64,000 bases of DNA, taken from NCBI GenBank assembly GCA_035221665.1, contig CM069160.1, positions 6,944,001 through 7,008,000 of the forward strand. Direction: 5' to 3'. Made by a program: the position numbers and the translations under genes. Below, piece by piece: positions 7,255 through 28,455 of this stretch. How positions within the stretch are numbered: the stretch's first letter is position 1; each line of letters opens with the position of its first letter. The stretch is from Okamejei kenojei (lineage: Eukaryota). The notes below the pieces were generated by a model, which saw only the letters and a program-made list of their open reading frames with translations, ran no database searches and was not told the origin of the DNA.

Positions 7255-8346
7255 CAACATGGCGGAGGTGTACTGCAGCTGGTAGAGGATGATGGAGCCC
7301 AGGCTCCCACTGGTGACGCTGGCCTCGCCGAGCAGCAGCCCTCCGTAGCACAGCACACACACCTTCAGCAGCAGCCCCGAGAGCTGCAGGAGGCAAGAGC
7401 AGCACCGGGGCACCAGCCCGGCCACCCCAACCCCAGAGAAACACCCCTCACCCCCAGAGAATCACCCCTCACCCCCTCAACTCCAGAGAATCACCCCTCA
7501 CCCCCCACAGCCCGATTTCCCCTCAACCCTCAACCCCAGAGAATCACTCCCCCACCCCACCGGCCGCCCACCACCTCACCCCCTCACCCCCTCACCCCCA
7601 GAGAATCACCCTTCACCCCCCCCCCCTCCGCCCAACCACAACCCAATAGAAACACACCCAGATGCTACTACTGCAGACGCAGACGTACTTTCCCCCGGAC
7701 GCAGTCGCCCCTTCTGCAGACGCCCCTCCCACAGATGACCCTCTCCCAGACACAGAAGCCCCAACACAGACATCTCTCCTCCAGTCGCAGACGTACTTCC
7801 CCCTCCCGCAGACACACGTCTGTCTGACGCCCCTCCGCCAGATGCCGACGCCCCCCTTCCATGCTCACCAGCCGAGGACTGGACCACGGAGACAGCTACA
7901 AGGAGGAAGCGTCTGAGATCTGGTCGCAGACAGGACAGCAGTCTGGAGACGGAGGCGGTGGCGTGCATCTGCCCAGTGACTGAGCCCCCGTCTGGGACAG
8001 GAAGCGCTGGGCCACGACCAGCCCCAGGGCGGCGACCAGGTAGGTGGGGGCCAGGCGGGTGATGGGAGGGCGGGCAGGAGCTCGGTGTGGGTGGAGCCCG
8101 CGGCAGTGCCAGGCTGGCGTAGGTGGGTAGCAGCAGGCAGCAGGTGGCCAGTGCCGGCCACAGCTCGGCTAGACGGCTGCCCCCCAGACGGACCAGCGGC
8201 CGCAGGCAGATGCACCACCCCCCCTCCCCCCACAGCCAGACCTGCAACAGCGGCCCCACCCCCCACAGCCGCAGCGCCCCGCTCAGCCCGCAACTGACCG
8301 TCACATCCAACATGGCCAGTGGCAGTAGGAACACTGGCAACGCCAT
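7255..8346 (-). pseudogene. TAP1: TAP1 (ABCB2 peptide transporter) relic: exon 1 (8346-7869) and exon 6 (7383-7255) only
   Basis: Exon 1 runs MALPVFLLPLAMLDV...ATASVSRLLSCLRPDLRRFLLVAVSVVQSSAG|gtgag (phase-1 donor), compared with human TAP1 [30 protein letters not shown]|E as recalled. Exon 6 follows a cctgcag acceptor: 129 bp encoding LSGLLLKVCVLCYGGLLLGEASVTSGSLGSIILYQLQYTSAML, aligning without gaps to [43 protein letters not shown]. Its donor GT is one base off. No other TAP exons were seen. Confidence 0.82.
7428..7815. repeat. Short tandem repeats (CCCCAGAGAATCACCCCTCA-like and CGCAGACGTACTTCCCC-like) between the TAP1 exons
   Basis: Directly visible repeated units. Confidence 0.7.
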
Positions 8347-8779
8347 CCTCTCCTGCATCACAGGCAGCGCGTCACTGGCAGTGCCCACACTCCACCCACA
8401 CAGCACCACCAACCCTCTGCCCACCTCCCACTCCCCCGGCCTGCCATTCCCAACCGTTTATGCACAGGGCAGGTTTACAGGGATATGGGCCACGCGTATA
8501 TGTGAATCGTTTCCTTTGATACAGCTCCAAATACAATAACAAATAAAGAGCTGGAGGAGCCAGCGGAGCAGGGAGCGTCCCAACCCTTCACCAGATGCCC
8601 CTCTGTGTTGAACAACATGGAGGAGACACAGGGAACTGCAGGTGTTGGAATCTGGAGCAAAACACAAAGTGCTGGAGGAACGCAGCGAGTCAGGCTGCAA
8701 TGGGGGAGGGAATGGACAGATGACGCTCTGGGTCGGGACCCTTCTTCAGATATCAGTCTTTCAGGTTTCACATCCAGAG

Positions 8780-10680: not shown

Positions 10681-10899
10681 ACCAAAGGCCATTGGTTTAA
10701 GGCCAGGGATAAGAGGTGAGAGGGGATGAGGTTCTTGAACCAACACAACCTACACAACCCAGACATTATCTCAGTAATGAAACTCGACAGCCATCTCTTC
10801 ACTGCAATGGGCGTGTTTATTTGTGTAATTAAGTTTTTGAATTAATATCCTGTTCTTTTTTTTCATTAAATAATGAAATTAGTGTATATTCTGATTTTC

Positions 10900-10957
10900 A
10901 CTGCCCCCCTACCTTTCTCCTTGTATTCCTTCCCCTCTCCACTCTCCCACGTCTCTC

Positions 10958-11004
<47 letters not shown>

Positions 11005-14000
11005 ACCCCCCCCCCCACCACGGCCACATTAGTTTGGTTTATTATCGTTCAATCGGTTATTATCGTCAATCGAATGCACAGACATAGGAGAAAAGAGAAC
11101 AGCTAGTACAGAACCTCCCCTCTCCTCCCCACTGTCCAATCCCCTGCCCCGCCGTCTCCTGATCCCCCCCCCCATTCCCCCCTTTGACCCCACGCCCCCT
11201 CAAACCCTTGTCCCCTCACCCCTTGTCCCCTCTCTCCTCCCCACACTTACCTCCCCCCCCCACCCGTGTCCGTTAACTCCTTTCCTCTCTGCCCCACCCT
11301 TCTGTCCGCTACCCCCTTTTATTCGCCATCCATGGCCCCAGCCTTCGCTCACCCCGCCAGTTCTCCTCACCCCTTCCACTCTCCCCTTCTCACCCCCATC
11401 TCCCTCTCCCCGTCCCCCTCTCCGCTCTCCTGCTCTCCCTCTCCCCTAACCCTCCCCCCTGTCTACCCCTCCCGTCTCTAACCTCCCACTACCCTCCCCC
11501 TCTCTACCCCTCCAATCTCCTTCCCTCCCCTCTCCATCCCTCTTTCCACCCCCCCTCCCTCCCCCCTCCTCTTCTCTCCCATCTCCCATCCCTCCCCTAA
11601 CACCACCCTCCCTCTCCCATTCACCACCCTCTCCTCGAGCCCTACCTCCTCCCCACTCCCCTCCCGCTTCTAACCTTAAACCCTCTCCTTCCCTCTCTCC
11701 CGCTCTAACCTCCTACTCTCCCTCTCCCTCCCTTTCACCTCTCCCCTCCCCGCTCTACCTTCCGTCTTTCCCCCATTCCTCCCCATCACTCTCCCCTCTT
11801 CCTACCTACCCCCCTCCTCCCGCACCTTCTCTCCACTTCTTCCCCCTTCCCTCTCTCCCCGCCCCCCTCTCCCCCTCCCATCTTTCCCCTTTCTACCCTC
11901 CCTTCCCCTCTTCTAACAATCCCTCCCCCTCCCCCTCCATCTACCAACCATCTCCCCTGTCTCCCCTCCAATCCCACCCCCTCATCATCCCTTTCCCCTC
12001 TCCCTCTCCCTCAACCCCCTCCCCTCATCTCACCCGCCCCCTTGCCCTCCCCATCTACCTCCCTCCCATCTCCTCCGCTCCCCCTCCCCTCTACATTCCC
12101 ATCCCGCTCTTCCCCCGTCCCTCTCCACTACCTCTCCCCCATCCCATTCCCACTCTCTCCCTCACACTCCTCCCCTCTCTCGCACCTGCCCCTCTCGCCC
12201 CTCGCCCCTCTCACCCCCCACCTCTCTTCCTCATTCTCTCACACCTTCGTCGTCCCCTACCCCCTCCCTCTCCTCCCTCCCTCCCTCCCCATCTCCATCT
12301 CCCCCGGCCCCTCCTTCCCCCTTCTCACCCTCCCCTCACCCTCGCCCCCTTCTCTCCGTTCTCCCTCGGCCATCCAGCTCCATGCCCCGTGCTCTCCTCC
12401 CCCTCACCTCTCTCCCCTCTCCTGCCCCCCTCCCTCGCCCCTCCCCCTCTCCCTTATTGGCTTTCTCCTCCTCTACCCCTCCACTCCCCTTCTTCCTGCC
12501 ACTATCCCCCCACTACCCCCCCCTCGTCTCGTCTCCCACCTCTCCACCATCCCACTACACTCTCCCTCTAAGCCCTCCTCCTCTCCACTGTCTCCCGCCT
12601 GCCCTCCGCTCTCCTCGCCGTCACTCCTCTCCCATCTACCTCCCCATCTCACCCCATTGTATATTCCCACTGCCCTCCCCCCCCCCCCCCTCTCCCTCGT
12701 CCTCCTCCCTCTTTCTCTCCCTTCTCCCTTCGCCCTCTCCGTCTGTTCCGCTCCCGCTGCTCCCACTCATCTCCCTCCCCCTTCTCTACCCGCCCTCACC
12801 CTCTCCTACCTCTCCACCCCCTTCCCCCCTTCCTCTCCCATTTTCCACACCGCTCGCTCTCCTCTCCCCTATCCACTCACCCCTGCCCCTTCCCTCTCTT
12901 CCCCTCCCCATCTATCTCTCCCCCTCTACTCTCCCCTCCCCCTCCCCCTCCCCTTCCCCTCTTCCCCCATCTCACTTTCCGCCCCTCACTCTCTCCCCAT
13001 CCCATTAACCCCTCCACCGCTCCCCTCCATCTCTCTCCCCCTCCCCTCCCCCCGCCTCACTTCCCCACTCACCCCCCTTCCCCACTCCTCCAACAATCCC
13101 CTCACTCGCCCTTCCCCTTCATACCCTCTCCCTCCACTTTCCGCCTCCACATCCCCCCTCTTCCTCGCACTCCCTCTCCCCCTCCCTCCCGCGCGCCCCT
13201 CCAATCTTACGCGCGCCCCCTCTCCTCCCCCCTCCCCTTCCCCCCCCCTACCCCACCCCCTCCCTCTCCCTCTCTCACCCCCTCCTCCTCCCCTCCCCTT
13301 ACCCCCCCCCCCCCCCCCCTCTCCCTCCCCCTCCCCCCCCCCCCCCCCTACCACTCCCCGTCTCCCCTCTCGTTATCTCATCCCCCCTCTCTCCCCTCAC
13401 CCCCCCTCTCCCAACCCTCCCACAATCCCCTCAAGTCACCCCTTCCCCCCCTCCCGCACTCCCTCTCCCCCCCTCTCATTCCTCCCCTCCCCGTTAACCC
13501 CCTCTCAATCCCCCGTCCACCCTCTCACTCCCCACCCCCCCTCTCCTCCCCCCCTCCCCACTCTCCCCTCCCGCTACTGCCCCCTCTTTTTCCCCTCCCC
13601 TCTCTCCTCTACCCCTCTCCCACCACTCTCCCCACCTCTCCCTACCCCTCCTCCCTCCGTCCCCTCCCTCCCTCTCCCCCTTCCCCTCTCCTCCCCCCTC
13701 TCCCCACACTCCTCTCCCCCCTCCCTCCCCCTCTCCCCGACCCGCTTCCCCTCTCACCCTCCTCCCCCACGCTACCAGGGGATTTCCCACCGGATTATCA
13801 CCTTCGCTGCAAAGCTGGCAGCGGGGCGGGCTGTCAGCCGTGGCGCTGGCCAATGGGAGCAGAGCGCGGCTGTGAGTCACAGAGCAGTTGACTGGGCTAG
13901 AGCGAGGCTGTAACAAGTTGGAGTTTGTGTGTCTGGATAACCCCGCCCCTGCTGCTGTGCTGCTGGCTGCTGCTGTCTGCCGCCGCCAAAGGCGAGCGCG

Positions 14001-15160
14001 CACCCCCCCTTCTATTCACCGCTCTCCCTCCTCTCCTCCTCCTCGATTTACCGTATACCCTGCCCATGCCTTTGCTCTCCATCTCCCCCCTCACCAATTC
14101 TCCTCTCCCCCACATCTCTCACCTTTTCTCTCGAAAGACTGCGGGATCCCCCCCCCTCTACCCGCCTCCACTCCTCTCCATCACCTCTTTCCCCTCCCCC
14201 TCCGACTGCCTCTCCGCTCCCCCCTCTCTCCTTCCCCCTCCTCCGAGCGCCGCCTCCCCCTCGCATTTCCCTTCTCCCCCTAGCCCCTTCCCCGCCTGCC
14301 TCCACTTCTCTCCTCTCCTCCTCCCCTTCCCTATCCCTCTCCGCTCACCCTCCCTACTGGGCCCCCTACACCTCTCCACTCCCCCCCTCCTCCTCTCCCC
14401 TTTTACCACTTTCCCCACTCCTTTCCCACCTATACCCTCTCCCTCCTACTTCCCTTCTCCCCCTCACACTCTCCACCCTCCCTTTCCCCCCTACCCCTGC
14501 CGGCTTCCCCCTCCCTCTCTAACCCCCTCTTCCCCTCTCACCTGTCTGGCCGTTTCGCCCACACTTCCCTCTATCCCCTTCCCCTCCCCTCTCCCTCCCG
14601 CTCCCGCTTCCCCGTCCCCTCACCCTCCCCTCTCACCTCCCCCTCCCCCTCTCCCCTCCGCATCTCCCCTCTCTCTCCCCTCCTCTTCTCACCGCCCCCC
14701 TCTCCAACCCCTAACCCCCTACCCTCTCCCCTCTCGACTCTCTCCCCTCCTCCACCCCACCCTCACCTCCCCATCTCCCTTTCCCCCTCTCCCCTCCCCA
14801 TTCTTCCCCACTATATCACTCTCCCCCCTCTCTCCTCCCGCTACACTTTACGTCACCCACTTTGCTCCGCACCCACTACCCCTCCCCCTTTCTCTCCCCA
14901 TCCCCCCAGCCCCCTATCCCCTGCGCCTCCCTCTCCACGCCCACTACCCCTCCCCCTCTCCCACCTCCCCTCTCCCCTAGCCCTTTCCCCTCTTCCTCTC
15001 TATCCCCTCTTCCTCATCCTGCCTACCCCTCCCCCATCTCCCCTCTTCTCTCCTCTCCCTCTCTACGCAACCAGCCCCTCATCCCACCCCCTCTCCCCTC
15101 CTCCTCCGCCACTCCAATCTCCCCCTCTCTCCCTCCCCTCTCTCTCTACCCCTCCCGTCT
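10900..15160. repeat. Very long polypyrimidine (C/T) low-complexity tract, probably error-prone consensus
   Basis: Almost exclusively C/T on the + strand, with a long poly-C run at about 10960-11015. Interrupted only by regulatory-module copy 1. Confidence 0.9.
13768..14015 (-). promoter_or_regulatory. SXY / ISRE-like / kB module, copy 1 (many small insertions)
   Basis: Homologous to copies 2-4: GGGGATTTCC, CCAAT and TGAGTCA are present, but X1 and S are disrupted by small insertions. Confidence 0.5.
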
Positions 15161-15164
15161 GCAC

Positions 15165-16112
15165 ACAATAATACTCCAGCTGCAGTCTCTGTAGGGCCCT
15201 GTACAACTGCAGAAGGACCGTATCTGCTCCTATACTTCAAACCCTCTTGTTATGAAGGCCGACCAATGCCATTAGCTTTCTTCAGCTGCCTGCTGTACCT
15301 GCATGCTTACTTTCATAGACTGATAAACAATAAACCCCCAAGGGATCCCCTTTTCCTAAACTATGACGCCATTTCAGGATAATAATCTGCCTTCCAGTTC
15401 TTGCCACCAAAGTGGATAAGCTCATATGTATCCATATTAAACTGGCATAGCTGCCATGCATCTGCCCCTCAACCAACCAGTGTCAATCAAGTTACCTGCT
15501 CCAAACTCCTCATAGGCATCATCCTCACAGTTCACACTGTCACCCAGGTCCCAGACGTTGTGTGCGCACAGGGCTTTGTGTCATCTGCAAATTTGGCTAA
15601 TGGTTACTTTTAATCCCTTCAGGTAAGTAATTAATGTATATTGAGTAAAATAGCTGCGGTCCCAGCACTGAGTCTTGCGGTACCCCACTAGTCACTGCAT
15701 TCCATTCTGAAAGTGACCCGTTAATCCCTACACTTTGTTGCCTGTCTGCCAACCAATTTTCTATCCATGTCAGTACCCTACCCTCAATAACAAACATGTG
15801 CTCTCAATTGCTAATCTCCTATGTGGGACCTTATCAAAGGCTTTCTGAACGTCCAGGAAAGTCCACTAGCACCCACGTGTCCATGTTCCTTGTTACATCC
15901 TCAGAAAATTCCAGAACATAGGTCAAGCATGATTTCCCTTTCGTAAATCCACGCTGACTCGGACCGATCCTGTTATTGCTATCCAAATGTGCCGCGATTT
16001 CTTCTTTCTATAATTGACTCCACGCATCTTCCCCACCACCAATGTCAGGCTAACCTGGTCTATAATGGTTCACTGTTTTCACTCTCTTCCCGCCTTTCTT
16101 AAAAAAATAGGA
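15165..16112 (-). mobile_element. CR1 RT fragment (part of the duplicated block)
   Basis: WIENWLADR..VTSGVPQDSVLGP. Shares the 'gtccaggaaagtcc' lesion with 23630-24490. Confidence 0.85.
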
Positions 16113-16114
16113 TA

Positions 16115-16626
16115 ACCGAGGACCAGCCCGGAAGACCCGGCTCGCCCGCCACGTATCGAGGACCCACGGGAACCCAGCTGGAGGGCCGGTGAGCAGACCG
16201 GCTGCGGGAGGGAGTGCACGGCCTGGACGGGGTAGCCGTGGGTCGCTGGAGGCCCTGCAGCTGCCTGGGGCTCGGCTGGACCTGGCGCCGCTCCAAGAGG
16301 CCGAGCACGTGGAGCCAGACGCGGTGGAGCAGCGGTGGAGGACACCACGGCTACGCTTGGCCAGGCCGACCCTGCAACGCCGCCAGGACAACGGGCCTTC
16401 ACGGTCAGATCAAGATCCCTGCACTTACAACAACTGGGACTTGAACATGGCAACAAACTGGCAACTTTGTATTCTGTCTCACTGTACTACTGCTGTACAC
16501 CAGCACTGTATCTACAATGCTTATCTAATATGTATCTAAGTGCTTATGTATAGTGATACTTGTACTAAACTGTATCCAAAAATGAATTTCCCTGTACCTC
16601 GGTACAGGTGGCAAATAAAGTACCAG
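16115..16626 (+). mobile_element. GC-rich non-autonomous retroposon-like element with a Rex1-type 3' tail (copies at 20251-20758 and 24491-25070)
   Basis: Near-identical copies. The 3' end GAATTTCCCTGTACCTCGGTACAGGTG.CAAATAAAGTACCA resembles other LINE tails in the window. Confidence 0.5.
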
Positions 16627-16903
16627 ACCATACCTGTGCCAGTGCACTGTTCAGAAGGAGTGTCCGTGCCAGTGCACTGGACAGAGGGGGTGTCAGTGGA
16701 CAGTCGTGTGACCAGTGACCCGTGGTCATCGCTGTGAATGTGGGAGCATCGTGGGGCTGAACTGGTCAGTCTGTGTGGGGTAAGGGCACGGGAGAGAGAC
16801 TGCTCATCTCTCCTCGCCGAATAAAGACTGATTCTCTCGAGAGCAGGGCAGGGAAAGGGTGCTCTGATCACAAAGGACCTGTTGCCCCTCTGCCCCATCT
16901 CCA

Positions 16904-16951
<48 letters not shown>

Positions 16952-17052
16952 TCTCACAGTAGCTCGGTACAAACCTGAGACTAAACTTCGTCCTTAATTT
17001 TTGTTCTGCCTGTTCTTCACTCCGGAGATTCCCCTAAACACTATGTTGTGCC

Positions 17053-17229
17053 NNNNNNNNNNNNNNNNNNNNNNNNNNNNNNNNNNNNNNNNNNNNNNNN
17101 NNNNNNNNNNNNNNNNNNNNNNNNNNNNNNNNNNNNNNNNNNNNNNNNNNNNNNNNNNNNNNNNNNNNNNNNNNNNNNNNNNNNNNNNNNNNNNNNNNNN
17201 NNNNNNNNNNNNNNNNNNNNNNNNNNNNN
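17053..17229. other. Assembly gap
   Basis: N run. Confidence 1.
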
Positions 17230-17582
17230 CCCCTCCACCTCTCCCCTCCCCCCTCTTCCCTCACGCTCTCCCCCTCCCCCTCTCCCCCTCCCCCCCTCTC
17301 CCCCCCTCCTCCTGTCACCACCCCTCCCTCCATTCAGCCCTTCCCCTCCTCCCCCTCTCCCCTCCCCCGTGTGCCTTCTCCCCTCTTTCCACTCCCATCC
17401 CCCCCCCTCCCCACTGCTTCCCCTCTCTCCTCCGCTGCCCCTCTCTCCCCTTCCTCTCCCTCCTCCCACTCCCCCTCCCCCCCTCTCACACCTCCCTCTC
17501 CGCCATCTACGCTCCCCCCTCTCCCCCTCCGTCCCCCTCCCCCTCTCCCCTCCCTCCCCCTCTCCGCTCCCCCACGCTTCCA

Positions 17583-17704
17583 GGGGATTTCCACCGGATT
17601 CACCTTCGCTGCGAAGCTGCAGCGGGGGCGCGGCTGCTGGCCAATGGGAGCAGAGCGCGGCTGTGAGTCAGCAGTTGCTGGGTAGAGCGAGGCTGTACAG
17701 GTTG
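17583..17704 (-). promoter_or_regulatory. SXY / ISRE-like / kB module, copy 2 (intact spacing)
   Basis: On +: kB GGGGATTTCC 17583-92; CCAAT 17641-45; 18-nt spacer; TGAGTCA 17664-70; GCAGTTGCTGGG 17671-82; 16-nt spacer; AGGTTG 17699-704. On the minus strand this reads S-X1-X2-Y. Confidence 0.72.
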
Positions 17705-18289
17705 AGTTTGTGTGTCTGGATAACCCCGCCGCGCCGCTGCCGCTGCTGCTGCCGCCTGAAGGCCGCGCGCACCCCCTTTTATTCAGTCCGCAGTGGACTG
17801 ACTGAATGCAGAACATGGACACCATATTCTGGAGTAACTCAGTGGGACAGGCAGCATCTCTGGAGAGAAATAATGTGTCCATTCCCGTGAGATGCTGCCT
17901 GTCCGTAGAGTTACTCCAGCATTTTGTGTCTATCTTCGGTTTAAACCAGCCTCTTAGACAATAGTTGCAGGAGGAGAAGACCATTCGGCCCTTCGAGCAA
18001 GCACCGCCATTCACTGTGATCATGGCTGATCATCCACAATCAGTACCCCGTTCCAGTCTTCTCCCCTGACTCCACTATCTTTAAGAGTATCTAATTCTCT
18101 CTTGAAAGCATCCAGAGGATTGGTCTTCATTGTCTTCTGAGGCAGATAATTCCACAGATTCACAACTCTGGGTGAAAACGTTTTTCCTCATCTCTATTCA
18201 AAATAGCCTATCCCTTATTCTTAAACTGTTGCCCTAGGTTCAGGACTCCCTAAATAATCTTATATATTTCAAGATATGTTTCAATATTT

Positions 18290-19037
18290 AATATCAACCT
18301 TAACTGGGGGGCGACCATCGACTCCACAGTCAAAAAGGCACAACAGAGGATGTACTTCCTACGGCAGCTGAGGAAGCACAATCTGCCACAGGTAATGATG
18401 GTCCATTTCTACACCACCATCGTAGAGTCTGTTCTCACCTTCTACATCATGGTCTGGTTTGGCTCAGCCACCAAGCACGACACCTGGAGGCTGCAGCGAA
18501 TCGTCCGATCAGCAGAGAAGGTTATTGGCTGCAACCTTCCCTCCATTGATGAACTGTACACTGCAAGGGCCAGGAAGCGAGCGGGCAAGATCATCTCTGA
18601 CCCCTCTCACCCTGGCCACAAACTCTTTGAATCACGTCCCTCTGGAAGGCGACTAAGGACTGTCAAGGCTGCCAAAGCCAGACATAAAAACTGTTTTTAT
18701 CCATGAATAGTTGATCTACTCAATTGCCAAAACCTGTAGCCTCCTTTTGATCTGGTATTTTGTTGGTTCACATGCTTAATTCATGGAGTTNNNNNNNNNN
18801 NNNNNNNNNNNNNNNNNNNNNNNNNNNNNNNNNNNNNNNNNNNNNNNNNNNNNNNNNNNNNNNNNNNNNNNNNNNNNNNNNNNNNNNNNNNNNNNNNNNN
18901 NNNNNNNNNNNNNNNNNNNNNNNNNNNNNNNNNNNNNCATTCGTAACTGTCACTGTATGTCATGTTGTTACTTGTGGGCGGAAACCCAAGGCAAATTCCT
19001 TGTATGTGAATACTTGGCCAATAAACATACTTACTTA
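18290..19037 (+). mobile_element. Rex1/Babar-type LINE 3' end (spans an assembly gap)
   Basis: YFLRQLRK..FYTTIVESVLTFYIMVWFGS..LQRIVRSAEKVIG..DPSHPGHKLF; tail AATAAA..(TTAC)n. Confidence 0.8.
18791..18937. other. Assembly gap
   Basis: N run. Confidence 1.
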
Positions 19038-21738
19038 CGTAAGATCCCCTCTCATCCTTCTACATTCCAGTGTATACAAGCCCAGTCGCTCCATTCTCTC
19101 AACATATGACAGTCCCGCCATCCCGGGAATAAACGTCGTGAACCTACGTTGCACGCCCTCAATAGGAAGAATGTCCTTCCTCAAATTTGGAGACAAAACC
19201 TGCACGCAATACTCCAGGTGTGGTCTCATCAGGGCCCTGTATAACTGCAGAATGACCTCTTTGCTCCTATACTCAACTCCTCTTGTTATAAAGGCCAACA
19301 TGCCATTTGGCTTTCTTCACTGCCTGCTGAACCTGCATGCGTACTTTCATAGACTGATGTGCAATTAACCCCCAAGATCCCTTTTCCTAACGACGTCATT
19401 CAGATCCCCTTTTCCTAACTTGGCGTCATCAGGGCCCTGTATAACTGCAGAATGACCTCTTTGCTCCTATACTCAACTCCTATTGTTATGAAGGCCAACA
19501 TGCCATTAGTTTTCTGCACTGCCTGCTGTACCAGCATGCTTACTTTTATTGACAGATGAACAAGGACCCCCCAGATCTCGTTGTACTTCCCCTTTTCCTA
19601 ACATGACACAATTCAGATAATAATCTGCCTTCCTGTGAGATACTCTTGCCGACAAAGTGGATAACCTCACATTTATCCATATTAAACTGCATTTGCCATG
19701 CATCTGCCCTCTTACCCAACCTGTCCAAGTCACCCCGCATCCTCATAGCATCCGACTCACAGTTCACATTGCCCCCTCTCCCCAGCTTTGTGTCATCTGC
19801 AAATTTACTTATGTTACTTTTAAACCTTTCATCGAAATCGTTAATATATATTGTAAATATCTGCCGTTAATCCCTTCACTTTGTCTGCCAACAAATTTTC
19901 TATCCTTGTCAGTACCCGACCCCCAATGCCATGTGCCCTAATTTAGCCCACTAATCTCCAATGTGGGATCTTATCAAATGCGTTCTGAAAGTCCAGCTAC
20001 ACTACATCCACTGGCTCACCTTTGTCCATTTTCCTAGTTACATCTTATGAAAACTCCAGAGGAGTAGTCAAGCATGATTTCCCCTTTGTAAAACTAATGC
20101 TGACTCGGACCGATCCTATTACTGCTCTGCAAATGTGTCGCGATTTCATCTTTTATAATTGACTCCAGCATCTTCCCCACCAACAATGTAGGGCTAACTG
20201 GTCTATAATTCCCTGTTTTCTCTCTCTCGCCTTTCTTAAAAAGTGGGATAACCGAGGACCAGCCCGGAAGACACGGCTTGCTTGCCACATATCGAGGACC
20301 CACGGGAACCCAGCTGGAGGGCCGGTGAGCAGACCGGCTGCGGGAGGGAGTGCACGGCCTCGACGGGGGAGTGGGCCGCTGGAGGCCCTGCAGCTGCCTG
20401 GGGCTCGGCTGGACCTGGCGCCGCTCCAAGAGGCCGAGCACGTGGACCAGACGCGGTGGAGCAGCGGTGGAGGACACCACGGCTACGCTTGGCCAGGCCG
20501 ACCCTGCAACGCCGCCAGGACAACGGGCCTTCACGGTCAGATCAAGATCCCTGCACTTACAACAACTGGGACTTGAACATGGCAACAAACTGGCAACTTT
20601 GTATTCTGTCTCACTGTACTACTGCTGTACACCAGCACTGTATCTACAATGCTTATCTAATATGTATCTAAGTGCTTATGTATAGTGATACTTGTACTAA
20701 ACTGTATCCAAAAATGAATTTCCCTGTACCTCGGTACAGGTGACAAATAAAGTACCAGACCATACCTGTGCCAGTGCACTGTTCAGAAGGAGTGTCCGTG
20801 CCAGTGCACTGGACAGAGGGGGTGTCAGTGGACAGTCGTGTGACCAGTGACCCGTGGTCATCGCTGTGAATGTGGGAGCATCGTGGGGCTGAACTGGTCA
20901 GTCTGTGTGGGGTAAGGGCACGGGAGAGATACTGCTCATCTCTCCTCGCCGAATAAAGACTGATTCTCTCGAGAGCAGGGCAGGGAAAGGGTGCTCTGAT
21001 CACAAAGGACCTGTTGCCCCTCTGCCCCATCTCCATCTCTCTCACTCTTGGTCTCACAGTACCTCGGTACACATGAGAATAAACTTCGTCCTTTATTTTT
21101 GTTCTGCCTGTTCTTCACCCTGGAGCTCCCCCAACACTATGTTGTGCCCTCCGTCCGTCTCTTCCTCGCCCTCTCCCTCTCTCTCTCTTTCTTTCTTTCT
21201 CTCCCACTCTCTGCCCGATCTCTCTCTCTCTGTGCCCCTCTCCTCCCTCTCTCACGTTGCCCCTCTCCCACCCACTCCCTGTCGCTCTCTCTCTGTCTCT
21301 TCCCCCTCCCTCCCCTCCCCCCCTCTTCCCCTCATCTCCCCTCTCCCCTCCCCCTCCTCCACCCCTCCCTCCCATTCAGCCCCTTCCCCTCTTTCCCTCC
21401 TCCCCCTCCCCGTCTCTGTCTGCTCCACTCTTTCCACTCCCCTTTCCCCTCTCTCCCCCTCCCTACCCCTTCCCCTCACCTCTCCCTGCTGTCCCTCTCT
21501 CCCCTTCCACTCCCCTTCCACTCCCCCCCCTCTCATTATCCCTCCCCCCTCTCCGCCCCCCCCACACCGTCTGTCACTCTCCCCTCTCCCCTCCCACCCC
21601 CCTCCCCCCCCCTACACCCTCCCCTTCCCCGCTCTCCACACCCCTTCCCCTTCCCCCCTTTCCACTCCCCCTCCCCCTCTCTTCCCTCTACGATCCCCCT
21701 CTCCCCCCTGCGTCCCTCTCCCCTCCCCCACGCTACCA

Positions 21739-21854
21739 GGGGACTTTCACCGGTTTCACCTTCGCTGCGAAGCTGCAGCGGGGCGCGGCTGCCAGCCGTG
21801 TTGCTGGCCAATGTGAGTCAGCAGTTGCTGGGTAGAGCGAGGCTGTACAGGTTG
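21739..21854 (-). promoter_or_regulatory. SXY / ISRE-like / kB module, copy 3 (17-bp deletion between X2 and Y)
   Basis: GGGGACTTTC, GGTTTCACCTTC, then CCAAT-G-TGAGTCA (1-nt spacer instead of 18). X1 and S are intact. Confidence 0.65.
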
Positions 21855-22104
21855 AGTTGTTGTCTCTGGATAATCCCGCTGCTGCTGCTGCTGCTGCTGC
21901 TGCCTAAAGGCAGCGCGCACCCCTTCTATTCAGTCCGCAGTGGACTGAATGCAGAACATGGACACCATAACCTGGAGTAGCAGCGGAACAGGCAGCATCT
22001 TTGGGGAGAGTGAATGGGTCCATTCCCGTGAGATGCTGCTTGTTCGTTGAGCTACTCCAGCATTTTGTGTCTATCTTCGGTTCCAACCAGCACCTTAGAC
22101 AATA

Positions 22105-24490
22105 TACAATAGTTGCAGGGGTAGGCCATTCGGCCCTTCGAGCAAGCGCCGCCATTCACTGTGATCATGGCTGATCATCCACAATCAGTACCCCATTCCT
22201 GCCTTTTCCTCATTTCCCTTGACTCCACTATCTTTAAGAGCTCTATTTAACTCTCTCTTGAATACATCCAAAGTTGGTCTTTACTGCCTTCTGAGGCACA
22301 GAATTCCACAAATTCACAACTCTCTGGGTGAAAAACCTTGTCCTCATATCCGTACCGCAAGGCTCAGTGCTGGGACCCAGCTATTTACAATATATATTGA
22401 GGATTTGGACGAGGGAATTGAATGCAACATCTCCAAGTTTGCGGATGACACGAAGCTGGGGGGCAGTGTTAGCTGTGAGGAGGATGCTAAGAGGCTGCGA
22501 GGTGACTTGGATAGGCTTGGTGAGTGGGAAATTGCATGGCAAATGCAGTATAATGAGGATAAATGAGAGGTGGCAAGAACAGGAAAGTAGACCATTATTT
22601 GAATGGTGGCCATTTAGGAAAAGGGGAGATGCAACGAGACCTGGGTGTCATGGTGCACCAGTCATTGAAAGCAGGCATGCAGGTGCAGCAGGCAATGAAG
22701 AAAGCGAATGGTGCGTTCATAGCGAGAGGAGTTGAGTATAGGAGCAGGGAGGATCAGCTTGAGTTGTACAGGGCCTTGGTGAGACCACACCTGGAGTATT
22801 GCGTACAGTCTTGGTCTCCGAATCTGAGCAAAGACATCCTTGCCATAGAGGGAGTACAGAGAACGTTCACCAGACTGATTCCTGGGATGGCAGGACTTTC
22901 ATATGAAGAAATAATAGATAGACTCGGCTTGTACTCGCTAGAATTTAGAAGATTGAGAGGGGATCATAGAAACTTACAAAATTCTTAAGGGGTTGGACAG
23001 GCTAGATGCAGGAAGATTGTTTCCGATGTTGGGGAAGTACAGAACACGGGGTCACATTTTAAGGGTAAGGGGGAAGTCTTTTAGGACCGAGATGAGAAAA
23101 ACACTTTTCACACAGTGAGTGGTGAATCTGTGGAATTCTCTACCACAGAAGTAGTTGAGGCCAGTTCAATGGCTATATTTAAGAGGGAGTTAGATGTGGC
23201 CATTGTGGCTAAAGGGATCAGGGGGTACGGAGAGAAGGCAGGTACAGGATACTGAGTTGGATGACCAGCCATGATCATATTGAATGGCGGTGCAGGCTCG
23301 AAGGGTCGAATGGCCTACTCCTGCACCTATTTTCTATGTTTCTAAGTTTCTATGTTTAAATGGCCTACACCTTATTCTTAAACTGTGGCCCCTGGTTCTA
23401 GACTCCCCAAATATCGGGAACATGTTTCCAGCCTCCAGTGTGTCCAATCCCTAAATAATCTTAAATGTTTCAATAAGATCCCCTCATCCTTCTAAACTCC
23501 AGTGTATACAAGCCCAGTCGCTCCATTCTGTCAACAAATGACAGTCCCGCCATCCTGGGAATAAACGTCGTGAACCGACGCTGCACTCCCTCAATAGCAA
23601 AAATGTCCTTCCTCAAATTTGGAGACAGAAACTGCACACAGTACTCCAGGTGTGGTCTCACTAGGGCCCTGTACAACTGCAGAAGGGCCTCTTTGCTCCT
23701 ATTTTCAAATCCTCTTGTTATGAAGGCCAACATGCCATTAGCTTTCTTCACTGCCTGCTGTACCTGCATGCTTACTTTCATAGACTGATGAACAATAACC
23801 CCCAAGATCCCCTTTTCCTAACTTGACGCCATTCAGATAATAATCTGCCTTCCAGTTCTTGCCACCAAAGTGGATAAGCTCATATTTATCCACATTAAAC
23901 TGCATCTGCCATGCATCTGCCCACTCAACCAACCTGTCCAAGTCATCCTGCATCCTCACAGTTCACACTGTCACCCAGCTTTGTGTCATCTGCAAATGTG
24001 CTATTGTTACTTTTAATCCCTTCATGTAAGTCATTATTGTATATTGTAAGCATTAAATGTTGCGGTACCCCACTAGTCACTGCATTCCATTATGAAAGTG
24101 ACCCTTTAATCCCTACACTTTGTTGCCTGTCTGCCAACCAATTTACTATCCATGCCAGTACCCTACCCTCAATAACATGTGCTCTAATTTTGCCCACTAA
24201 TCTCCTATGTGGGACCTTGTCAAAGGCTTTCTGAACGTCCAGGAAAGTCCAATAGCTGCCGTTTGTCCATGTTCCTTGTTACATCCTCAGAAAATTCCAG
24301 AGCATAGGTCAAGCTTGATTTACCCTTCGTAAATCCACGCTGACTCGGACCGATCCTGTTACTGCTATCCAAATGTGCCGCTATTTCATCTTTTATAATT
24401 GACTCCAGCATCTTGCCCACCACCAATGTCAGGCTAACTGGTCTATAATTCACTGTTTTCTCTCTCCCGCCTTTCCTAAAAAGTGGGATA
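22105..24490 (-). mobile_element. CR1 3' half, interrupted by an opposite-orientation CR1
   Basis: RT peptides at 23470-24490. The 3' end at 22105-22350 continues at about 23357. Confidence 0.85.
22351..23356 (+). mobile_element. 5'-truncated CR1 nested in a CR1
   Basis: [30 protein letters not shown]; 3' tail (TTTCTATG)n. Confidence 0.88.
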
Positions 24491-25071
24491 ACCGAGGACC
24501 AGCCCGGAAGAGCCGGCCTACGAACGGGAACCCAGTTGGAGGGCCGGTGTGCAGCACGCCTCGACGGGGGGGAATGCGCCACTGGAGGACCTGCACAAGA
24601 GCCGAGCACGTGGACCAAACGCGGTGGAGCAGCGGTGGAGGACACCACGGCTACACTTGGCCAGTTCACGGTCAGATTGTAGATACGGTGCTGGTGTACA
24701 GCAGTAGTATAGTGAGACAGAATACAAAGTTGCCAGTTTGGCACCATGTTCAATCCCAGTTGTTGTAAGTGCAGGGACCTTGATGACCGTGAAGACCCGT
24801 TGTCCTGGCGGCGTTGCAGGGTCGGCCTGGCGAAGTGTAGCCTTGGTGCCCTCCACCGCTGTTCCGTCGCGTCTGGTCCAATGCTCGGCCTCTTGGAGCG
24901 GCGCCAGGTCCAGCAGAGCCCCAGGCAGCTGCAGGGCCTCCAGCCGCCCACTCCCACGTCGAGGCCGTGAACTCACTCCCGCAGCCGGTCTGCTCACCGG
25001 CCCTCCAGCTGGGTTCCCGTAGGTCCTCGACACATGGCGGGTGAGCCGGGTCTTCCGGGCTGATTCTCGGT

Positions 25072-26535
25072 TATCACACTTTTTAAGAAAGGCGGGAGAG
25101 CGAAAACAGGGAATTATAGACCAGTCAGCCTGACATTGGTGATGGGGAAGATGCTGGAGTCAATCATAACATATGAAATAGCGGCACATTTGGATAGCAG
25201 TAACAGGATCGGTCCGAGTCAGCATGGATTTACGAAGGGGACATCATGCTTGATTAATCTTCTGGAATTTACTGAGGATGCAACTAGGAAAATGGATAAG
25301 GGAGAGCTAGTGCATGTAGTGTATGTGGACTTTCACAACGCCTTATATAGGGTCCCACATAGGAGATTAGAGGGCAAAATTAGAGCATTTGGTATTGGGG
25401 TTAGAGTGCTGACATGGATCGAAAATTGGTTGGCAGACAGGAAGCAAAGAGTGGGGACTAACGGATCCCTTTCAGAATGGCAGGCAGTGACTAGTGGGGT
25501 ACCGCAAGGCTCCGTGCTGGGACCGCAGATACTTACACAATATACATTCGTGATTTCGATGCAGGGATTCAAAGTAACAATTAACAAATTTCTAGATAAC
25601 ACAAAGCTGGGTGGCAGTGTGAACTCTGAGGAGGATGCTATGGGGATGCAGGATGACTTGGACAGGTTGGGTGAGTGGGAAGATGCATGGCATAAGCAGT
25701 TTAATGTGGATAAATGTGAGGTTATCCACTTTAGTGGAAGAACAGGAAGGCAGATTATTATCTGAATGGTGCCAAGTTATGAAAAGGGGAAGTACAGCGA
25801 GATCTGGGCGGGTGGGGTGGGGGTGGGGGGGGGGGGGGTCCTTGTTCTTCAGTCAATGAAAGTGTGCATGCTGCTACAACAGGCAGTGAATAAAGCTAAC
25901 AGCATTTTGGCCGTCATAACAAGAGGAGTTGAGTATAGGAGCAAAGAGGTCCTTCTGCAAAGAGGGCTCTAGTGAGACCACACCTGGATATTGTGTGCAG
26001 TTTTGGTCCCCTAATTTGAGGAATGTCACTCCTGCTATCGAGGGCGTGCAGCGTAGCTTCACGACGTTTATACCTGGGATGGCGGGGCTGTCATATGTTG
26101 AATGAATGTAGCGAGTGGGCTTGTATACACTGGAGTTTAGAAGGGCGAGAGAGAATCTTATTGAAACATATTCGATTATTTAGGGAACTGACACGCTGGA
26201 GGCAGGAAACATGTTCCCGATGATGGGGGAGTCCAGAACCAAGGACCAGAGTCCAAGAATAAGGGGTAGGCCATTTAGAACGGAGATGAGGACAAGCTTT
26301 TTCACCCAGAGAGTTGTGAATCTGTGGAATTCTCAGCCTCAGAAGGCAGTGAAGACTAATTCTCTGGATGCTTTCAAGAGAGAGTTAGAAAGAGCTCTTA
26401 AAGATAGTGGAGTCAAGGGATATGGGGAGAAGGCAGGAACGGGGTACTGATTGTGGATGATCAGCCATAATCACAGTGCATGGTGGTGCAGGCTCGAAGG
26501 GCCGAATGGCCGACTCTTGCAACTATTGTCTATTG
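25072..26535 (+). mobile_element. CR1 3' half in the inverted copy of the duplicated block
   Basis: ORFs 25136-25765 and 26211-26450 ([28 protein letters not shown]). Confidence 0.88.
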
Positions 26536-26779
26536 TCTAACATGCTGGTTTAAACCGAAGTTAGTCACAAATTGCTGGAGTAAATCAACGGACAGGCAGC
26601 ATCTCACGGAAATGGACCCATTCCTTTTCTCCAGAGATGCTGCCTGTCCCGCGGAGTTACTCCAGAATATGGTGTCCATGGTGTTCTGCATTCAGTCCAC
26701 TGCGGACTGAATAGAAGGGGTGCGCGCTGCCTTTAGGCGGCGGCAGCAGCAGCGACGGGGTTATCCAGAGACATAAACG

Positions 26780-26912
26780 CAACCTGTACAGCCTTGCTCT
26801 ACCCAGCAACTGCTGACTCACAGCCGCACTCTGCTCCCATTGGCCAGCGCCACGGCTGGCAGCCCCGCCCCGCTGCAGCTTCGCAGCGAAGGTGAAACCG
26901 GTGGAAATCCCC
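26780..26912 (+). promoter_or_regulatory. SXY / GC-box / ISRE-like / kB module, copy 4 (intact; inverted relative to copies 1-3)
   Basis: S CAACCT 26780-85; 16 nt; X1 CCCAGCAACTGC 26802-13; X2 TGACTCA 26814-20; 18 nt; Y ATTGG 26839-43; GC box CCCCGCCCC 26863-71; GAAGGTGAAACC 26888-99; kB GGAAATCCCC 26903-12. Confidence 0.75.
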
Positions 26913-27154
26913 TGGTAGCGTGGGGGAGGGGTGAGGGGGAGGGGAGAGGGGGAGGGGAGAGGGGGAGGGGAGGGGGAGGGGAGAGGGGGAGGGGAGAGGG
27001 GAGAGGGGGAGAGGAGAGGGGGGGGAGGGGAGAGGGGGAGTGGGAGAGCGGGAGGGGAGAGGGGGAAGGGGAGGGGAGAGCGGGAGGGGAGGGGAAGTGG
27101 AGAGAGGGACAGAGGGGTGAGGGAGAGCGAGAGAGGGGAAAGACTGATAAGGGG

Positions 27155-28300
27155 AGACAATAGACAATAGGAGTAGGCCATTCGGCCATTCTAGCCACCA
27201 CCGCCAATCAATGTGATAATGGCTGATCATGCCAATCAGTACTCCGTTCATGCCTTCTCCCCGTATTCCCTGACTCCGCTATCTTTAAGAGCCCTAACAG
27301 GCTCTCTCTTGAAAGTAGGCAAGGAACCGTCCTCCACCGCCCTCTGAGGCAGAGAATTCCACACACTCACAACTCTCTGTGTGAAAAGGTGTTTCATCGT
27401 CTCCGTTCTAACTGGCTTACCCCTTATTCTTAAACTGTTGCTCGTGGTTCTGGACTCCCCCAACATCGGAAACATGTTTCCTGCCTCTAGCATCTCCAAA
27501 CCCTTAATAATCTTATGTGTTCTATAAGATTCTCTCTCATGCTTCTAAAATCCAGAGTACACAAGCCCAGCCGCTCCATTCTCTCAGCATATTACTGTCC
27601 CACCATCCCGGGAACTAATCTTGTAAACCTACGCTGCACTCCGTCAATAGCAAGAATGTCCTTCCTGAAATTAGGCGACCAAATCTAAACACAATACTCC
27701 AGGTGTGCTCTCACTAGGACCCTGTATAACTGCAGAAGGTTCTCTTTGTTCCTATACTCAACTCGTCTTGTTATGAAGGCCAACATGCCATTCCCTTTCC
27801 TCACTGCCTGCTGTACCTGCATGCTTACTTTCATTGACTGATGAACAAGGACCCCCAGATCCCGTTGTACTTCCCCTTTTCCCAACTTGACACCATTTAG
27901 ACAATAATCTGCCTTCCTGTTTTTGCTACCAAAGTGGATAACCTCATATTTATCCACATTAAATTTCATCTGCCTTGCATCTGCCCACTCACCCAACCTG
28001 TCCAAGTCACCCTGCATTCTCATGGCATCCTCCTCATAGCTCACACTGCCACCCAGGTTTGTTACTTTTAATCCCCTCATCTAAATTATTAATGTATATT
28101 GTAAATATCTGCGGTCCCAGCACCGAGCCTTGCGGTACTGCACTAGTCACTGCGTGCCATTCTGAAAGGGACCCGTTAATCCCTATTCATTGTTTCGTGT
28201 CTGCCAACCAATGTTCTATCCATGTCAACACTGCCCCCAATACCATGTGCTCAAATTTTGCCCAGTAACCTCCCATGAGGGACCTTATCAAATGCTTTCA
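27155..28300 (-). mobile_element. CR1 3' half
   Basis: ORFs 27685-28080 and 27248-27499; tail (AGACAAT)n on the + strand. Confidence 0.88.
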
Positions 28301-28322
28301 AAAGGGGGAGAGGTGAAGAGGG

Positions 28323-28455
28323 NNNNNNNNNNNNNNNNNNNNNNNNNNNNNNNNNNNNNNNNNNNNNNNNNNNNNNNNNNNNNNNNNNNNNNNNNNNNNN
28401 NNNNNNNNNNNNNNNNNNNNNNNNNNNNNNNNNNNNNNNNNNNNNNNNNNNNNNN
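28323..28455. other. Assembly gap
   Basis: N run. Confidence 1.

What the first reader, a model, noticed from the sequence alone, without database searches (positions are those of the whole stretch)
13768..26912. Four orphan MHC-type S-X1-X2-Y modules with mammalian spacing, each coupled to ISRE-like and NF-kB sites: a candidate distal enhancer array
Seen (copy 4): CAACCT-16 nt-CCCAGCAACTGC-TGACTCA-18 nt-ATTGG, then a GC box, GAAGGTGAAACC and GGAAATCCCC. Copy 2 has the same 16/18 spacing. Established: MHC class I and II promoters use an SXY module bound by RFX, CREB/ATF1 and NF-Y with strict spacing to recruit NLRC5 or CIITA. As I recall them, HLA-A reads CAACCT-16-CCTGGATACTCA-CGACGCG-18-ATTGG and shares the CTCCCATTGG end, and the HLA-DRA X1 box is CCTAGCAACAGA. 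Unusual here: kB and ISRE lie on the Y side rather than upstream of S; the module combines a class-I-like S box with a class-II-like X1 box; no intact gene is attached; and it is amplified four times. Three copies point toward the TAP1 relic and one toward the TRIM gene about 3 kb away. Inference: promoter relics that may now act as an NLRC5/CIITA- and interferon-responsive enhancer cluster for the TRIM or class I gene, and a view of an ancestral SXY architecture.
Basis: partly seen in the sequence, partly recalled or inferred. Interest (0 to 1): 0.85.

Follow-up and report, generated by a model that had tools for sequence, protein, structure and literature searches.

The report
Duplicated MHC-type promoter cassette, four copies
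A roughly 235-base control element built like the switch in front of mammalian MHC genes lies four times in a repeat-rich stretch of a cartilaginous-fish MHC, but the four are copies of one ancestral element made by local duplication, only one copy is fully intact, and any enhancer role is untested.

Summary
Four copies of an S-X1-X2-Y block, each followed by a GC box, an ISRE-like site and a kB site, lie at about 13.8, 17.6 and 21.8 kb (minus strand) and 26.8 kb (plus strand). The S-16-X1X2-18-Y layout is far beyond chance.

The four are not independent. Each sits in the same colinear unit of LINE, foldback repeat, module and purine-rich tract. That unit was copied three times in tandem, 3.8-4.15 kb apart, and once in inverted orientation.

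Only copy 4 has every box and both spacings intact.
- Copy 2 lost 11 nt after Y and carries a mutated ISRE.
- Copy 3 lost 17 nt between X2 and Y.
- Copy 1 is riddled with indels.

Module substitutions (3-5%) are fewer than in the flanking transposon DNA (12-13.5%), and CpGs are retained. This fits activity or hypomethylation, but gene conversion is an equally open cause.

K-mer depth suggests about 20-30 copies genome-wide. The scan has noted similar kits on the same chromosome piece, about 5.8 Mb before and 0.68 Mb beyond this window.

No usable RNA evidence was found. The best reading is duplicated orphan copies of one MHC-type promoter cassette. Copy 4 may still serve the TRIM21-like gene 2.9 kb downstream. 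An enhancer array remains speculation.

The parts
26686..26920 (+). Copy 4, the only complete module. It holds the pre-S CpG/(CAG)n-rich segment, S 26780-85, X1 26802-13, X2 26814-20, Y 26839-43, GC box 26863-71, ISRE-like site 26888-99 and kB site 26903-12.
17583..17790 (-). Copy 2. SXY is intact with 16/18 spacing (S 17704-17699, X1X2 17682-17664, Y 17645-17641). There is an 11-nt deletion after Y, the ISRE-like site is mutated, and kB 17592-17583 is intact.
21739..21935 (-). Copy 3. S, X1 and X2 are intact (21854-21814), but 17 nt between X2 and Y are deleted, placing Y at 21812-21808. The ISRE-like site 21763-21753 is intact; the kB site is mutated.
13768..14010 (-). Copy 1, the most decayed. 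S reads CAACTT (13920-13915), there are indels in X1 and between X1 and X2, X2-18-Y is kept (13879-13850), the ISRE is broken, and kB 13788-13778 is intact.
25000..27142 (+). Duplication unit carrying copy 4: LINE (reverse transcriptase ORF 25136-25765), LINE 3' end, foldback repeat 26541-26685, module, purine-rich tract 26920-27150.
21526..24517 (-). Duplication unit carrying copy 3. It is colinear with the copy-4 unit in inverted orientation and is interrupted by a roughly 1-kb LINE insertion at 22353-23354. Together with the copy-4 unit it forms an inverted duplication with a roughly 530-bp spacer.
   Evidence: (I1, I3, I4)
17355..20322 (-). Duplication unit carrying copy 2. It is colinear with the copy-4 unit and is interrupted at 18250-19040 by another retroelement fragment and an assembly gap.
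13591..16186 (-). Duplication unit carrying copy 1. The same LINE lies upstream (16186-15208). The LINE 3' end and the foldback are replaced by low-complexity DNA at 15208-14010.
10930..13767 (-). Purine-rich (GGGGAG-type) low-complexity tract that follows copy 1. Shorter tracts of the same kind follow copies 2, 3 and 4 (17230-17582, 20900-21738, 26920-27150).
7255..8358 (-). TAP1 relic. It consists of a putative exon 1 (7870-8358, no database match) and an internal TAP1 transmembrane fragment (7255-7392) that matches human TAP1 residues 416-458. It lies 5.4 kb downstream of copy 1.
29822..30232 (+). RING + B-box exon of a TRIM21-like gene, 2.9 kb downstream of copy 4. Its PRY/SPRY exon lies at 47022-47729.

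Best explanation
This is one ancestral MHC-type compound regulatory cassette of about 235 bp. It consists of a CpG-rich leader, S-X1-X2-Y with the spacing found in mammals, a GC/Sp1 box, an ISRE-like site and a kB site.

The cassette became embedded in a unit of LINE, foldback repeat, cassette and polypurine tract. That unit was then copied by local segmental duplication, three times in tandem 3.8-4.15 kb apart and once in inverted orientation, inside a decaying, transposon-ridden part of a cartilaginous-fish MHC.

The copies are orphan promoter/enhancer relics. Copies 1 and 3 have lost defining spacing or boxes and copy 2 is partly damaged.

Copy 4 is complete. It is the one most likely still able to assemble an RFX / bZIP (CREB or AP-1) / NF-Y platform that recruits an NLRC5- or CIITA-like coactivator. 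If active, it most plausibly works as an upstream interferon/NF-kB-responsive enhancer or alternative promoter of the TRIM21-like gene 2.9 kb downstream. That distance shrinks to roughly 0.5-1 kb once later transposon insertions and simple repeats are discounted.

Shown: the motif architecture, the four copies, their common origin by duplication, their lesions, their lower substitution divergence and their CpG retention.

Inferred: origin from a real antigen-presentation-gene promoter, factor binding, and any present activity.
For: Architecture and chance:
- The exact S-16-X1X2-18-Y pattern occurs three times against 0.00 expected.
- A loose X1X2Y pattern is expected 0.015 times per window.
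- The S-X distance of 16 matches that given for NLRC5-occupied modules (PMC4374748).
- SXY modules are defined by fixed order, orientation and spacing (PMC1802633; PMC7866136).
- X1 contains the RFX half-site AGCAAC, and Y reads GGCCAATGGG on the other strand, which fits the NF-Y flank consensus (sequence; consensus from my own knowledge).
- kB and the ISRE-like site are 3 nt apart, like the adjacent EnhA/ISRE pair of class I promoters (PMC3987962).

Common origin:
- All four copies share the same upstream LINE in colinear order.
- The tandem offsets are about 4.14 kb and there is an inverted pair.

Decay:
- Alignment A1 shows the lesions in copies 1-3.

Possible residual activity:
- Module substitution divergence is 3-5% against 12-13.5% in the co-duplicated transposon flank (Fisher p 0.001-0.04).
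- CpG observed/expected is 0.61-0.88 in the modules against 0.30 in the LINE flank.

Precedents:
- HCP5 is an orphan HLA class I promoter kept active inside a duplication block (PMC6562477).
- Distal S-Y enhancers work in either orientation (PMC1802633).
Against: - No transcript, start site or splice joint could be tied to any copy. The two RNA-like runs are contigs only, with depth about 14 over the module and 0 just after it.
- The units of copies 2 and 3 contain a 700-bp tract that is 99-100% identical amid 76-93% neighbours. Gene conversion or assembly collapse could therefore also explain the low divergence of the module.
- K-mer depth suggests about 20-30 copies genome-wide, including a variant absent from this window, so the element is more than a local relic.
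- The source gene is unknown. No TAP1 exon copies accompany copies 2-4, and the promoter of the class I gene in this window is not within the window.
- The TRIM gene has its own proximal region directly upstream of the ATG.
Confidence: 0.6

Rival explanations
1. Active distal enhancer array. All or most copies bind the RFX/CREB/NF-Y enhanceosome plus IRF and NF-kB, and together act as an NLRC5/CIITA- and interferon-responsive enhancer cluster for the TRIM gene or a class I gene.
For: - The module is less diverged than the co-duplicated flanks and keeps its CpGs.
- Distal S-Y enhancers regulated by RFX and CIITA exist in the human MHC class II locus and work in both orientations (PMC1802633).
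- Other scan notes describe similar kits some kilobases upstream of class I genes on the same chromosome piece (unchecked).
Against: - Three of the four copies have lesions in spacing or boxes that the literature calls critical (PMC4374748).
- The copies arose by passive segmental duplication.
- There is no RNA or chromatin support.
- NLRC5 showed no intergenic MHC sites in the mouse (PMC4374748).
Confidence: 0.2
2. Repeat-borne cassette. The module is part of a dispersed or macrosatellite repeat, for example a 4-kb unit present in tens of copies and collapsed in the assembly, or sequence carried along by LINE 3' transduction. Its motifs are a captured or fossil promoter with no host function.
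For: - Summed k-mer depth at 26848 is about 614 in X1 against a single-copy depth of about 19, and about 1260 in X3 against about 60.
- A variant not present in the window has depth 343 in X1 and 595 in X3.
- In copies 2-4 the module always follows a LINE 3' end and a foldback repeat.
- Assembly gaps and near-identical tracts suggest a collapsed array.
Against: - The copies in this window share at least 2 kb of colinear, multi-element flank, so they are segmental duplicates rather than independent insertions.
- No terminal repeats, LTR signals, poly(A) signal or target-site duplications were seen at the module borders.
- Depth from contigs is explicitly not a copy number.
- A canonical SXY layout is hard to explain without descent from an MHC-type promoter.
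Confidence: 0.15
3. Former TAP1 (TAP1/PSMB9-type) promoter. This sub-hypothesis on origin is compatible with the best explanation. The cassette was the TATA-less promoter of the TAP1 gene whose relic lies downstream of copies 1-3, and it was amplified as the gene collapsed.
For: - Copies 1-3 point at the TAP1 relic.
- The human TAP1/LMP2 promoter is TATA-less and GC-box rich, with an NF-kB site and an adjacent GC box on the TAP1-proximal side (PMC2191963). This matches the polarity here.
- Tap1/Psmb9 share an NLRC5/SXY site in the mouse (PMC4374748).
Against: - Copy 1 and TAP1 exon 1 are separated by 5.4 kb of low-complexity DNA and SINEs.
- No TAP1 exon copies lie in the other units.
- No PSMB9 is seen in the window.
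- The putative exon 1 itself has no database match.
Confidence: 0.25
4. Chance resemblance. This is a GC-rich sequence that happens to contain short motif matches.
For: The kB consensus is common in this G-rich window (23 expected), and the ISRE is imperfect.
Against: The joint S-16-X1X2-18-Y pattern with an NF-Y-type CCAAT flank is expected far less than 0.01 times per window.
Confidence: 0.02

Closest known systems
Mammalian MHC class I proximal promoter (Enhancer A/kB + ISRE module followed by the SXY module)
   Same: It has the same set of boxes: kB and ISRE adjacent to each other, and S, X1, X2 and Y in the same order on one strand. The S-X1 spacing is 16 nt, as reported for NLRC5-occupied modules, and X2-Y is 18 nt. 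The S box CAACCT and the Y flank CTCCCATTGG resemble HLA-A as I recall it (from memory, not checked).
   Different: The kB/ISRE pair lies on the Y side and is inverted relative to SXY. X1 is a cleaner RFX half-site, closer to class II. X2 is an AP-1-type TGACTCA rather than a CRE-like site. There is no TATA box, no downstream leader exon and no gene within 200-500 bp.
Distal S'-Y' enhancers of the human MHC class II locus and the Ii gene, and the RAB4B S-Y enhancer (Krawczyk et al.; PMC1802633)
   Same: These are S-Y modules away from, or outside, classical promoters. They work in either orientation, and S-Y profile searches have proved reliable predictors of them.
   Different: Those are single conserved sites shown to bind RFX and CIITA. 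Here there are four paralogous copies, three of them damaged, with no binding data and with added GC, ISRE and kB sites.
HCP5 and other promoter fragments in primate MHC class I duplication blocks (PMC6562477)
   Same: An orphan class I-type promoter is carried with retroelements by segmental duplication, and in the case of HCP5 it can remain interferon/NLRC5-responsive and drive a non-coding transcript.
   Different: HCP5 keeps its TATA and CAAT boxes and a leader exon, and it is known to be expressed. Here no transcript is known and the downstream sequence is a polypurine tract.
Human TAP1/LMP2 (PSMB9) bidirectional promoter (PMC2191963)
   Same: It is TATA-less, with a GC box next to an NF-kB site on the TAP1-proximal side, and the mouse orthologue shares an NLRC5/SXY site. 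Copies 1-3 here point at a TAP1 relic.
   Different: There are no divergent genes within 600 bp. The TAP1 relic is 5.4 kb away, and no PSMB9 gene is seen.

Membership tests
MHC SXY (S-Y) enhanceosome module | S, X1, X2 and Y boxes in fixed order and orientation on one strand | tested here: met
   Copies 2 and 4 are complete; the same order is kept in copies 1 and 3.
MHC SXY (S-Y) enhanceosome module | S-to-X spacing of about 16 bp (PMC4374748) | tested here: met
   It is exactly 16 nt in copies 2, 3 and 4. Copy 1 is altered by indels.
MHC SXY (S-Y) enhanceosome module | Constrained X-to-Y spacing (18 nt from X2 to ATTGG; 20-22 by the measure of PMC4374748) | tested here: met
   It is 18 nt in copies 1, 2 and 4. 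It is not met in copy 3, where 17 nt are deleted and 1 nt is left.
MHC SXY (S-Y) enhanceosome module | X1 carries an RFX-type site and Y an NF-Y CCAAT box | tested here: met
   X1 contains AGCAAC, which fits RGYAAC. Y reads GGCCAATGGG on the reverse strand. The consensus sequences come from my own knowledge.
MHC SXY (S-Y) enhanceosome module | Lies within a few hundred bp upstream of the start site of an MHC or antigen-presentation gene (promoter-proximal type) | tested here: not met
   The nearest genes are a TRIM21-like exon 2.9 kb away (copy 4) and a TAP1 relic 5.4 kb away (copy 1).
MHC SXY (S-Y) enhanceosome module | Occupied by RFX5/RFXAP/RFXANK, CREB/ATF1 and NF-Y, and recruits CIITA or NLRC5 | not testable with these tools
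   This needs ChIP, EMSA or reporter assays.
MHC SXY (S-Y) enhanceosome module | Class I-type (NLRC5-specific) S box as opposed to the class II type | not testable with these tools
   The consensus logos of PMC4374748 exist only as figures. The match of CAACCT to HLA class I is from memory.
Class I Enhancer A / ISRE module | kB consensus site next to an ISRE | tested here: inconclusive
   GGGGATTTCC fits GGGRNWYYCC in copies 1, 2 and 4, but 23 such sites are expected per window. The ISRE is one mismatch off GAAANNGAAA and is intact only in copies 3 and 4.
Class I Enhancer A / ISRE module | Placed upstream of the S box | tested here: not met
   It lies 45-70 nt beyond Y, on the other side of SXY.
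TAP1/PSMB9-type bidirectional promoter | TATA-less, with a GC box adjacent to an NF-kB site on the TAP1-proximal side | tested here: met
   The composition and polarity of copies 1-3 relative to the TAP1 relic agree with this (PMC2191963).
TAP1/PSMB9-type bidirectional promoter | Two divergent genes within about 0.6 kb | tested here: not met
   There is no PSMB9. TAP1 exon 1 is 5.4 kb away, and the other units carry no TAP1 exons.
Transposable element / dispersed repeat | Own termini (TIR, LTR or tail) and target-site duplications; copies inserted into unrelated flanks | tested here: not met
   The four copies in the window share at least 2 kb of colinear flank. No termini were seen at the module borders.
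Transposable element / dispersed repeat | Many copies genome-wide | tested here: inconclusive
   Contig k-mer depth suggests about 20-30 copies, but the tool warns that this is not a copy number, and the genome itself could not be searched.

The most novel reading that the evidence does not exclude
A compact, self-contained MHC regulatory cassette (SXY enhanceosome platform plus Sp1, IRF and NF-kB sites in about 135 bp) has been spread in some 20-30 copies along the class I-rich chromosome of a cartilaginous fish. There it would serve as NLRC5- and interferon-responsive distal enhancers or alternative promoters, including for a TRIM21-like gene. That would show that the enhanceosome layout with its 16/18 spacing predates the split of cartilaginous and bony vertebrates, and that MHC-type regulation can be distributed by duplicating the cassette rather than the genes.
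Probability: 0.15. Interest if true: 0.75.

Novelty: new variant of a known kind. Interest (0 to 1): 0.45.

Why it matters
SXY modules are the defining switch of MHC genes, but they have been worked out almost only in mammals. Searches of the held literature found no description of one in a cartilaginous fish.

A module with the same 16/18 spacing in this lineage supports an origin of the enhanceosome layout at the base of jawed vertebrates. Copies 3 and 1 provide natural spacing and box mutants for testing it.

The amplification itself is ordinary segmental duplication in a repeat-rich MHC. The value therefore lies in the architecture and in copy 4, not in the number four.

Tried and rejected
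Searches for other copies or relatives (none found):
- I translated an ORF that spans copy 2 and searched the protein collection to fish out other copies or other species. There were 136 word candidates and none was significant.
- An exact 26-nt X1X2 pattern in metagenome contigs gave 0 hits.
- A findings look-up by sequence was blank.

The TAP1 route to a source promoter:
- The putative TAP1 exon 1 protein gave 0 hits against 1.84 billion representatives and 0 hits in PDB. I could therefore not fetch intact elasmobranch TAP1 loci to compare promoters.

Sequencing reads:
- Read laying used the RNA-like runs X16 and X17 plus the DNA runs X1 and X3.
- All four runs are contigs only, so no start sites, strand or expression level could be read.
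- The joints listed are repeat-driven.
- The TRIM exon coverage comes from paralogues, because variant letters account for 100% of the depth there.

Checks within the window:
- Rfam found nothing in 9-32 kb.
- I looked for a conserved ORF, a start codon or a splice donor after the module, or on the S side. An ATG occurs only in copy 4, and the GT after CCCCTG is lost in copy 2. A conserved first exon is therefore rejected.
- No SXY-like pattern lies upstream of the class I alpha-1 exon within the window.

Procedure: I built no joined (spliced) protein model. Exons were searched separately by reference.

Full report
**What is there.** The window is a cartilaginous-fish-type MHC segment. It holds:
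- a TAP1 fragment at 7255-7392 on the minus strand, matching human TAP1 residues 416-458 at E = 2e-5;
- a putative TAP1 first exon at 7870-8358 that has no database match;
- a TRIM21-like gene on the plus strand, with its RING + B-box exon at 29822-30232 and its PRY/SPRY exon at 47022-47729;
- class I alpha-1 and alpha-2 exons at 60663-62070 on the minus strand.

Between 9 and 29 kb the DNA consists of LINE fragments, SINE tails and long polypurine/polypyrimidine tracts.

**The observation.** The pattern CAACCT-N16-CCCAGCAAC occurs three times, against 0.00 expected. The 19-mer X1+X2 occurs three times. A fourth, degenerate copy is read at 13768-14010.

Copy 4 reads S 26780-85, 16 nt, X1 26802-13, X2 26814-20, 18 nt, Y 26839-43, GC box 26863-71, GAAGGTGAAACC 26888-99 and GGAAATCCCC 26903-12. 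A loose X1-X2-Y pattern is expected 0.015 times per window and is found only here.

The literature defines the SXY module by fixed order, orientation and spacing (PMC1802633; PMC7866136). It gives 16 bp for S-X in NLRC5-occupied modules (PMC4374748). The SXY part is therefore real and far beyond chance.

The accessory sites are weaker. The kB site is a perfect GGGRNWYYCC on the other strand, but 23 such sites per window are expected in this G-rich DNA. The ISRE-like site is one mismatch from GAAANNGAAA. Their 3-nt apposition recalls the adjacent Enhancer A/ISRE pair of class I promoters (PMC3987962), but here the pair lies on the Y side and is inverted.

**One element, four copies.** A self-comparison shows that each module is the end of the same colinear unit.
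- The copy-4 unit, 25000-27142, matches 20322-17355 (copy 2). That match is interrupted at 18250-19040.
- It matches 24517-21526 (copy 3), interrupted by a 1-kb LINE at 22353-23354.
- It matches 16186-15208 plus 13957-13591 (copy 1).

Copies 1-3 are tandem, 3.8-4.15 kb apart. Copies 3 and 4 form an inverted duplication with a spacer of about 530 bp (I4). Each module is followed by a GGGGAG-type tract that is partly alignable between copies. The array is therefore the product of segmental duplication. It is not four independent recruitments of an enhancer.

**State of the copies.** Alignment A1 shows that only copy 4 has all boxes and both spacings.
- Copy 2 keeps SXY, but it lost 11 nt after Y and has GAAGGTGAATCC.
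- Copy 3 lost 17 nt between X2 and Y and has a mutated kB site.
- Copy 1 has a mutated S box, indels within X1 and between X1 and X2, and a broken ISRE.

No start codon, reading frame or splice donor is conserved on either side of the module.

**Signs for and against constraint.** Over the SXY-to-kB segment, substitution divergence between copies 2, 3 and 4 is 3-5%. Over the co-duplicated LINE 3' end and foldback it is 12-13.5% (Fisher p 0.001-0.04). CpG observed/expected is 0.61-0.88 in the modules and 0.30 in the LINE flank.

This fits an unmethylated, promoter-like state or purifying selection. But the units of copies 2 and 3 also contain a 700-bp tract that is 99-100% identical, set among 76-93% neighbours. 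Gene conversion or assembly collapse is therefore at work in this region and could produce the same pattern.

**Copy number and other places.** Contigs of two DNA samples laid on 24500-30400 give single-copy pieces depths of about 19 (X1) and about 60 (X3). At 26848, inside the module, the summed depths are 614 and 1260. A variant haplotype that is in none of the four window copies (26848T, 26867A, 26869A, 26870G) has depths of 343 and 595.

Taken at face value, that is about 20-30 copies. The tool warns that summed contig depth is not a copy number.

Other first-stage notes on the same chromosome piece describe:
- an X-X2-Y + ISRE + kB kit in 120 bp with no gene, and seven locally duplicated X-Y sites, about 5.8 Mb before this window;
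- inverted distal S-X-Y modules with kB and ISRE-like sites 9-12 kb upstream of a class I gene, about 0.68 Mb beyond it.

I could not compare those sequences, so they are leads only. They do fit the depth estimate.

**Expression.** The only RNA-like runs are small, kept as contigs, and only guessed to be RNA. They show depth of about 14 over 26667-26863 and 0 over 26864-27060. There is no joint linking the module to the TRIM exon. This is no evidence either way.

**Assembly gaps.** The flanks of gap 17053-17229 are colinear with the copy-3 unit, with offsets of 4100 and 4152, so continuity is plausible. The left flank of gap 18791-18937 has no paralogue in the window, so continuity there cannot be tested; that gap lies in transposon spacer. 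No gap letters were inferred or looked up.

**Origin.** Copies 1-3 point at the TAP1 relic. The human TAP1/LMP2 promoter is TATA-less, with an NF-kB site and an adjacent GC box on the TAP1 side (PMC2191963), and mouse Tap1/Psmb9 share an NLRC5 site (PMC4374748). A TAP1-type origin is therefore attractive.

However, 5.4 kb of low-complexity DNA and SINEs separate copy 1 from the putative exon 1, and the other units carry no TAP1 exons.

Copy 4 lies 2.9 kb upstream of the TRIM21-like ATG. About 1.9 kb of that distance is later LINE/SINE insertion and about 0.5 kb is simple repeat, so the original distance may have been 0.5-1 kb.

**Verdict.** The finding is a real SXY-type cassette with an unusual arrangement of accessory sites. 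It is present as four paralogous copies of one ancestor, three of them damaged. I rate the orphan-relic reading, with possible residual activity of copy 4, at 0.6. I rate an active enhancer array at 0.2 and a repeat-borne cassette without host function at 0.15.

That is the main gap in the analysis.

Noticed in passing
window 29819-30212: The RING/B-box exon of the TRIM21-like gene has summed contig depths of about 14,000 (X1) and 8,000-25,000 (X3), against single-copy depths of about 19 and 60. At several positions all depth carries a letter different from the window. This suggests a TRIM family of hundreds of near-identical paralogues in this genome.
   Followed up: partly
window 16236-16935 and 20370-21070: A 700-bp tract is 99-100% identical between the units of copies 2 and 3, while neighbouring parts of the same units are 76-93% identical. 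The cause may be gene conversion, a very recent secondary duplication or assembly collapse.
   Followed up: partly
window 21526-24517 and 25045-27142: The units of copies 3 and 4 form a large inverted duplication with a spacer of only about 530 bp. This looks like a fold-back or template-switch type rearrangement.
   Followed up: partly
window 26541-26685 (also 17800-17950 and 21960-22100): A foldback element made of two inverted copies of the common elasmobranch SINE/LINE tail lies directly upstream of the module in copies 2-4.
   Followed up: no
window 9050-15200, including a G run of about 70 nt at 10945-11020: More than 5 kb of strand-asymmetric polypurine/polypyrimidine low-complexity DNA surrounds copy 1 and the TAP1 relic. 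Such tracts follow every module and may have promoted the rearrangements.
   Followed up: no
window 38719-42498: A DIRS-like retroelement lies inside the TRIM gene. It has reverse transcriptase (40078-40740), a weak PCIF1_WW match below the Pfam cut-off at 41012-41530 (possibly a methyltransferase-like domain) and a tyrosine recombinase of the Phage_integrase family (41704-42498).
   Followed up: partly
window 7255-8358: The TAP1 relic has its putative exon 1 only about 480 bp from an internal transmembrane exon (human residues 416-458). No further TAP1 exons were seen downstream among LINE and Tc1-type transposon remains (transposase HTH domain at 4468-5085).
   Followed up: partly
window 29770-29800: The proximal region of the TRIM gene holds GCGAAAGGAAATGCGTTTTGAACC about 30 nt upstream of the ATG. 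This is an IRF/ISRE-like stretch that may be the gene's own interferon element.
   Followed up: no
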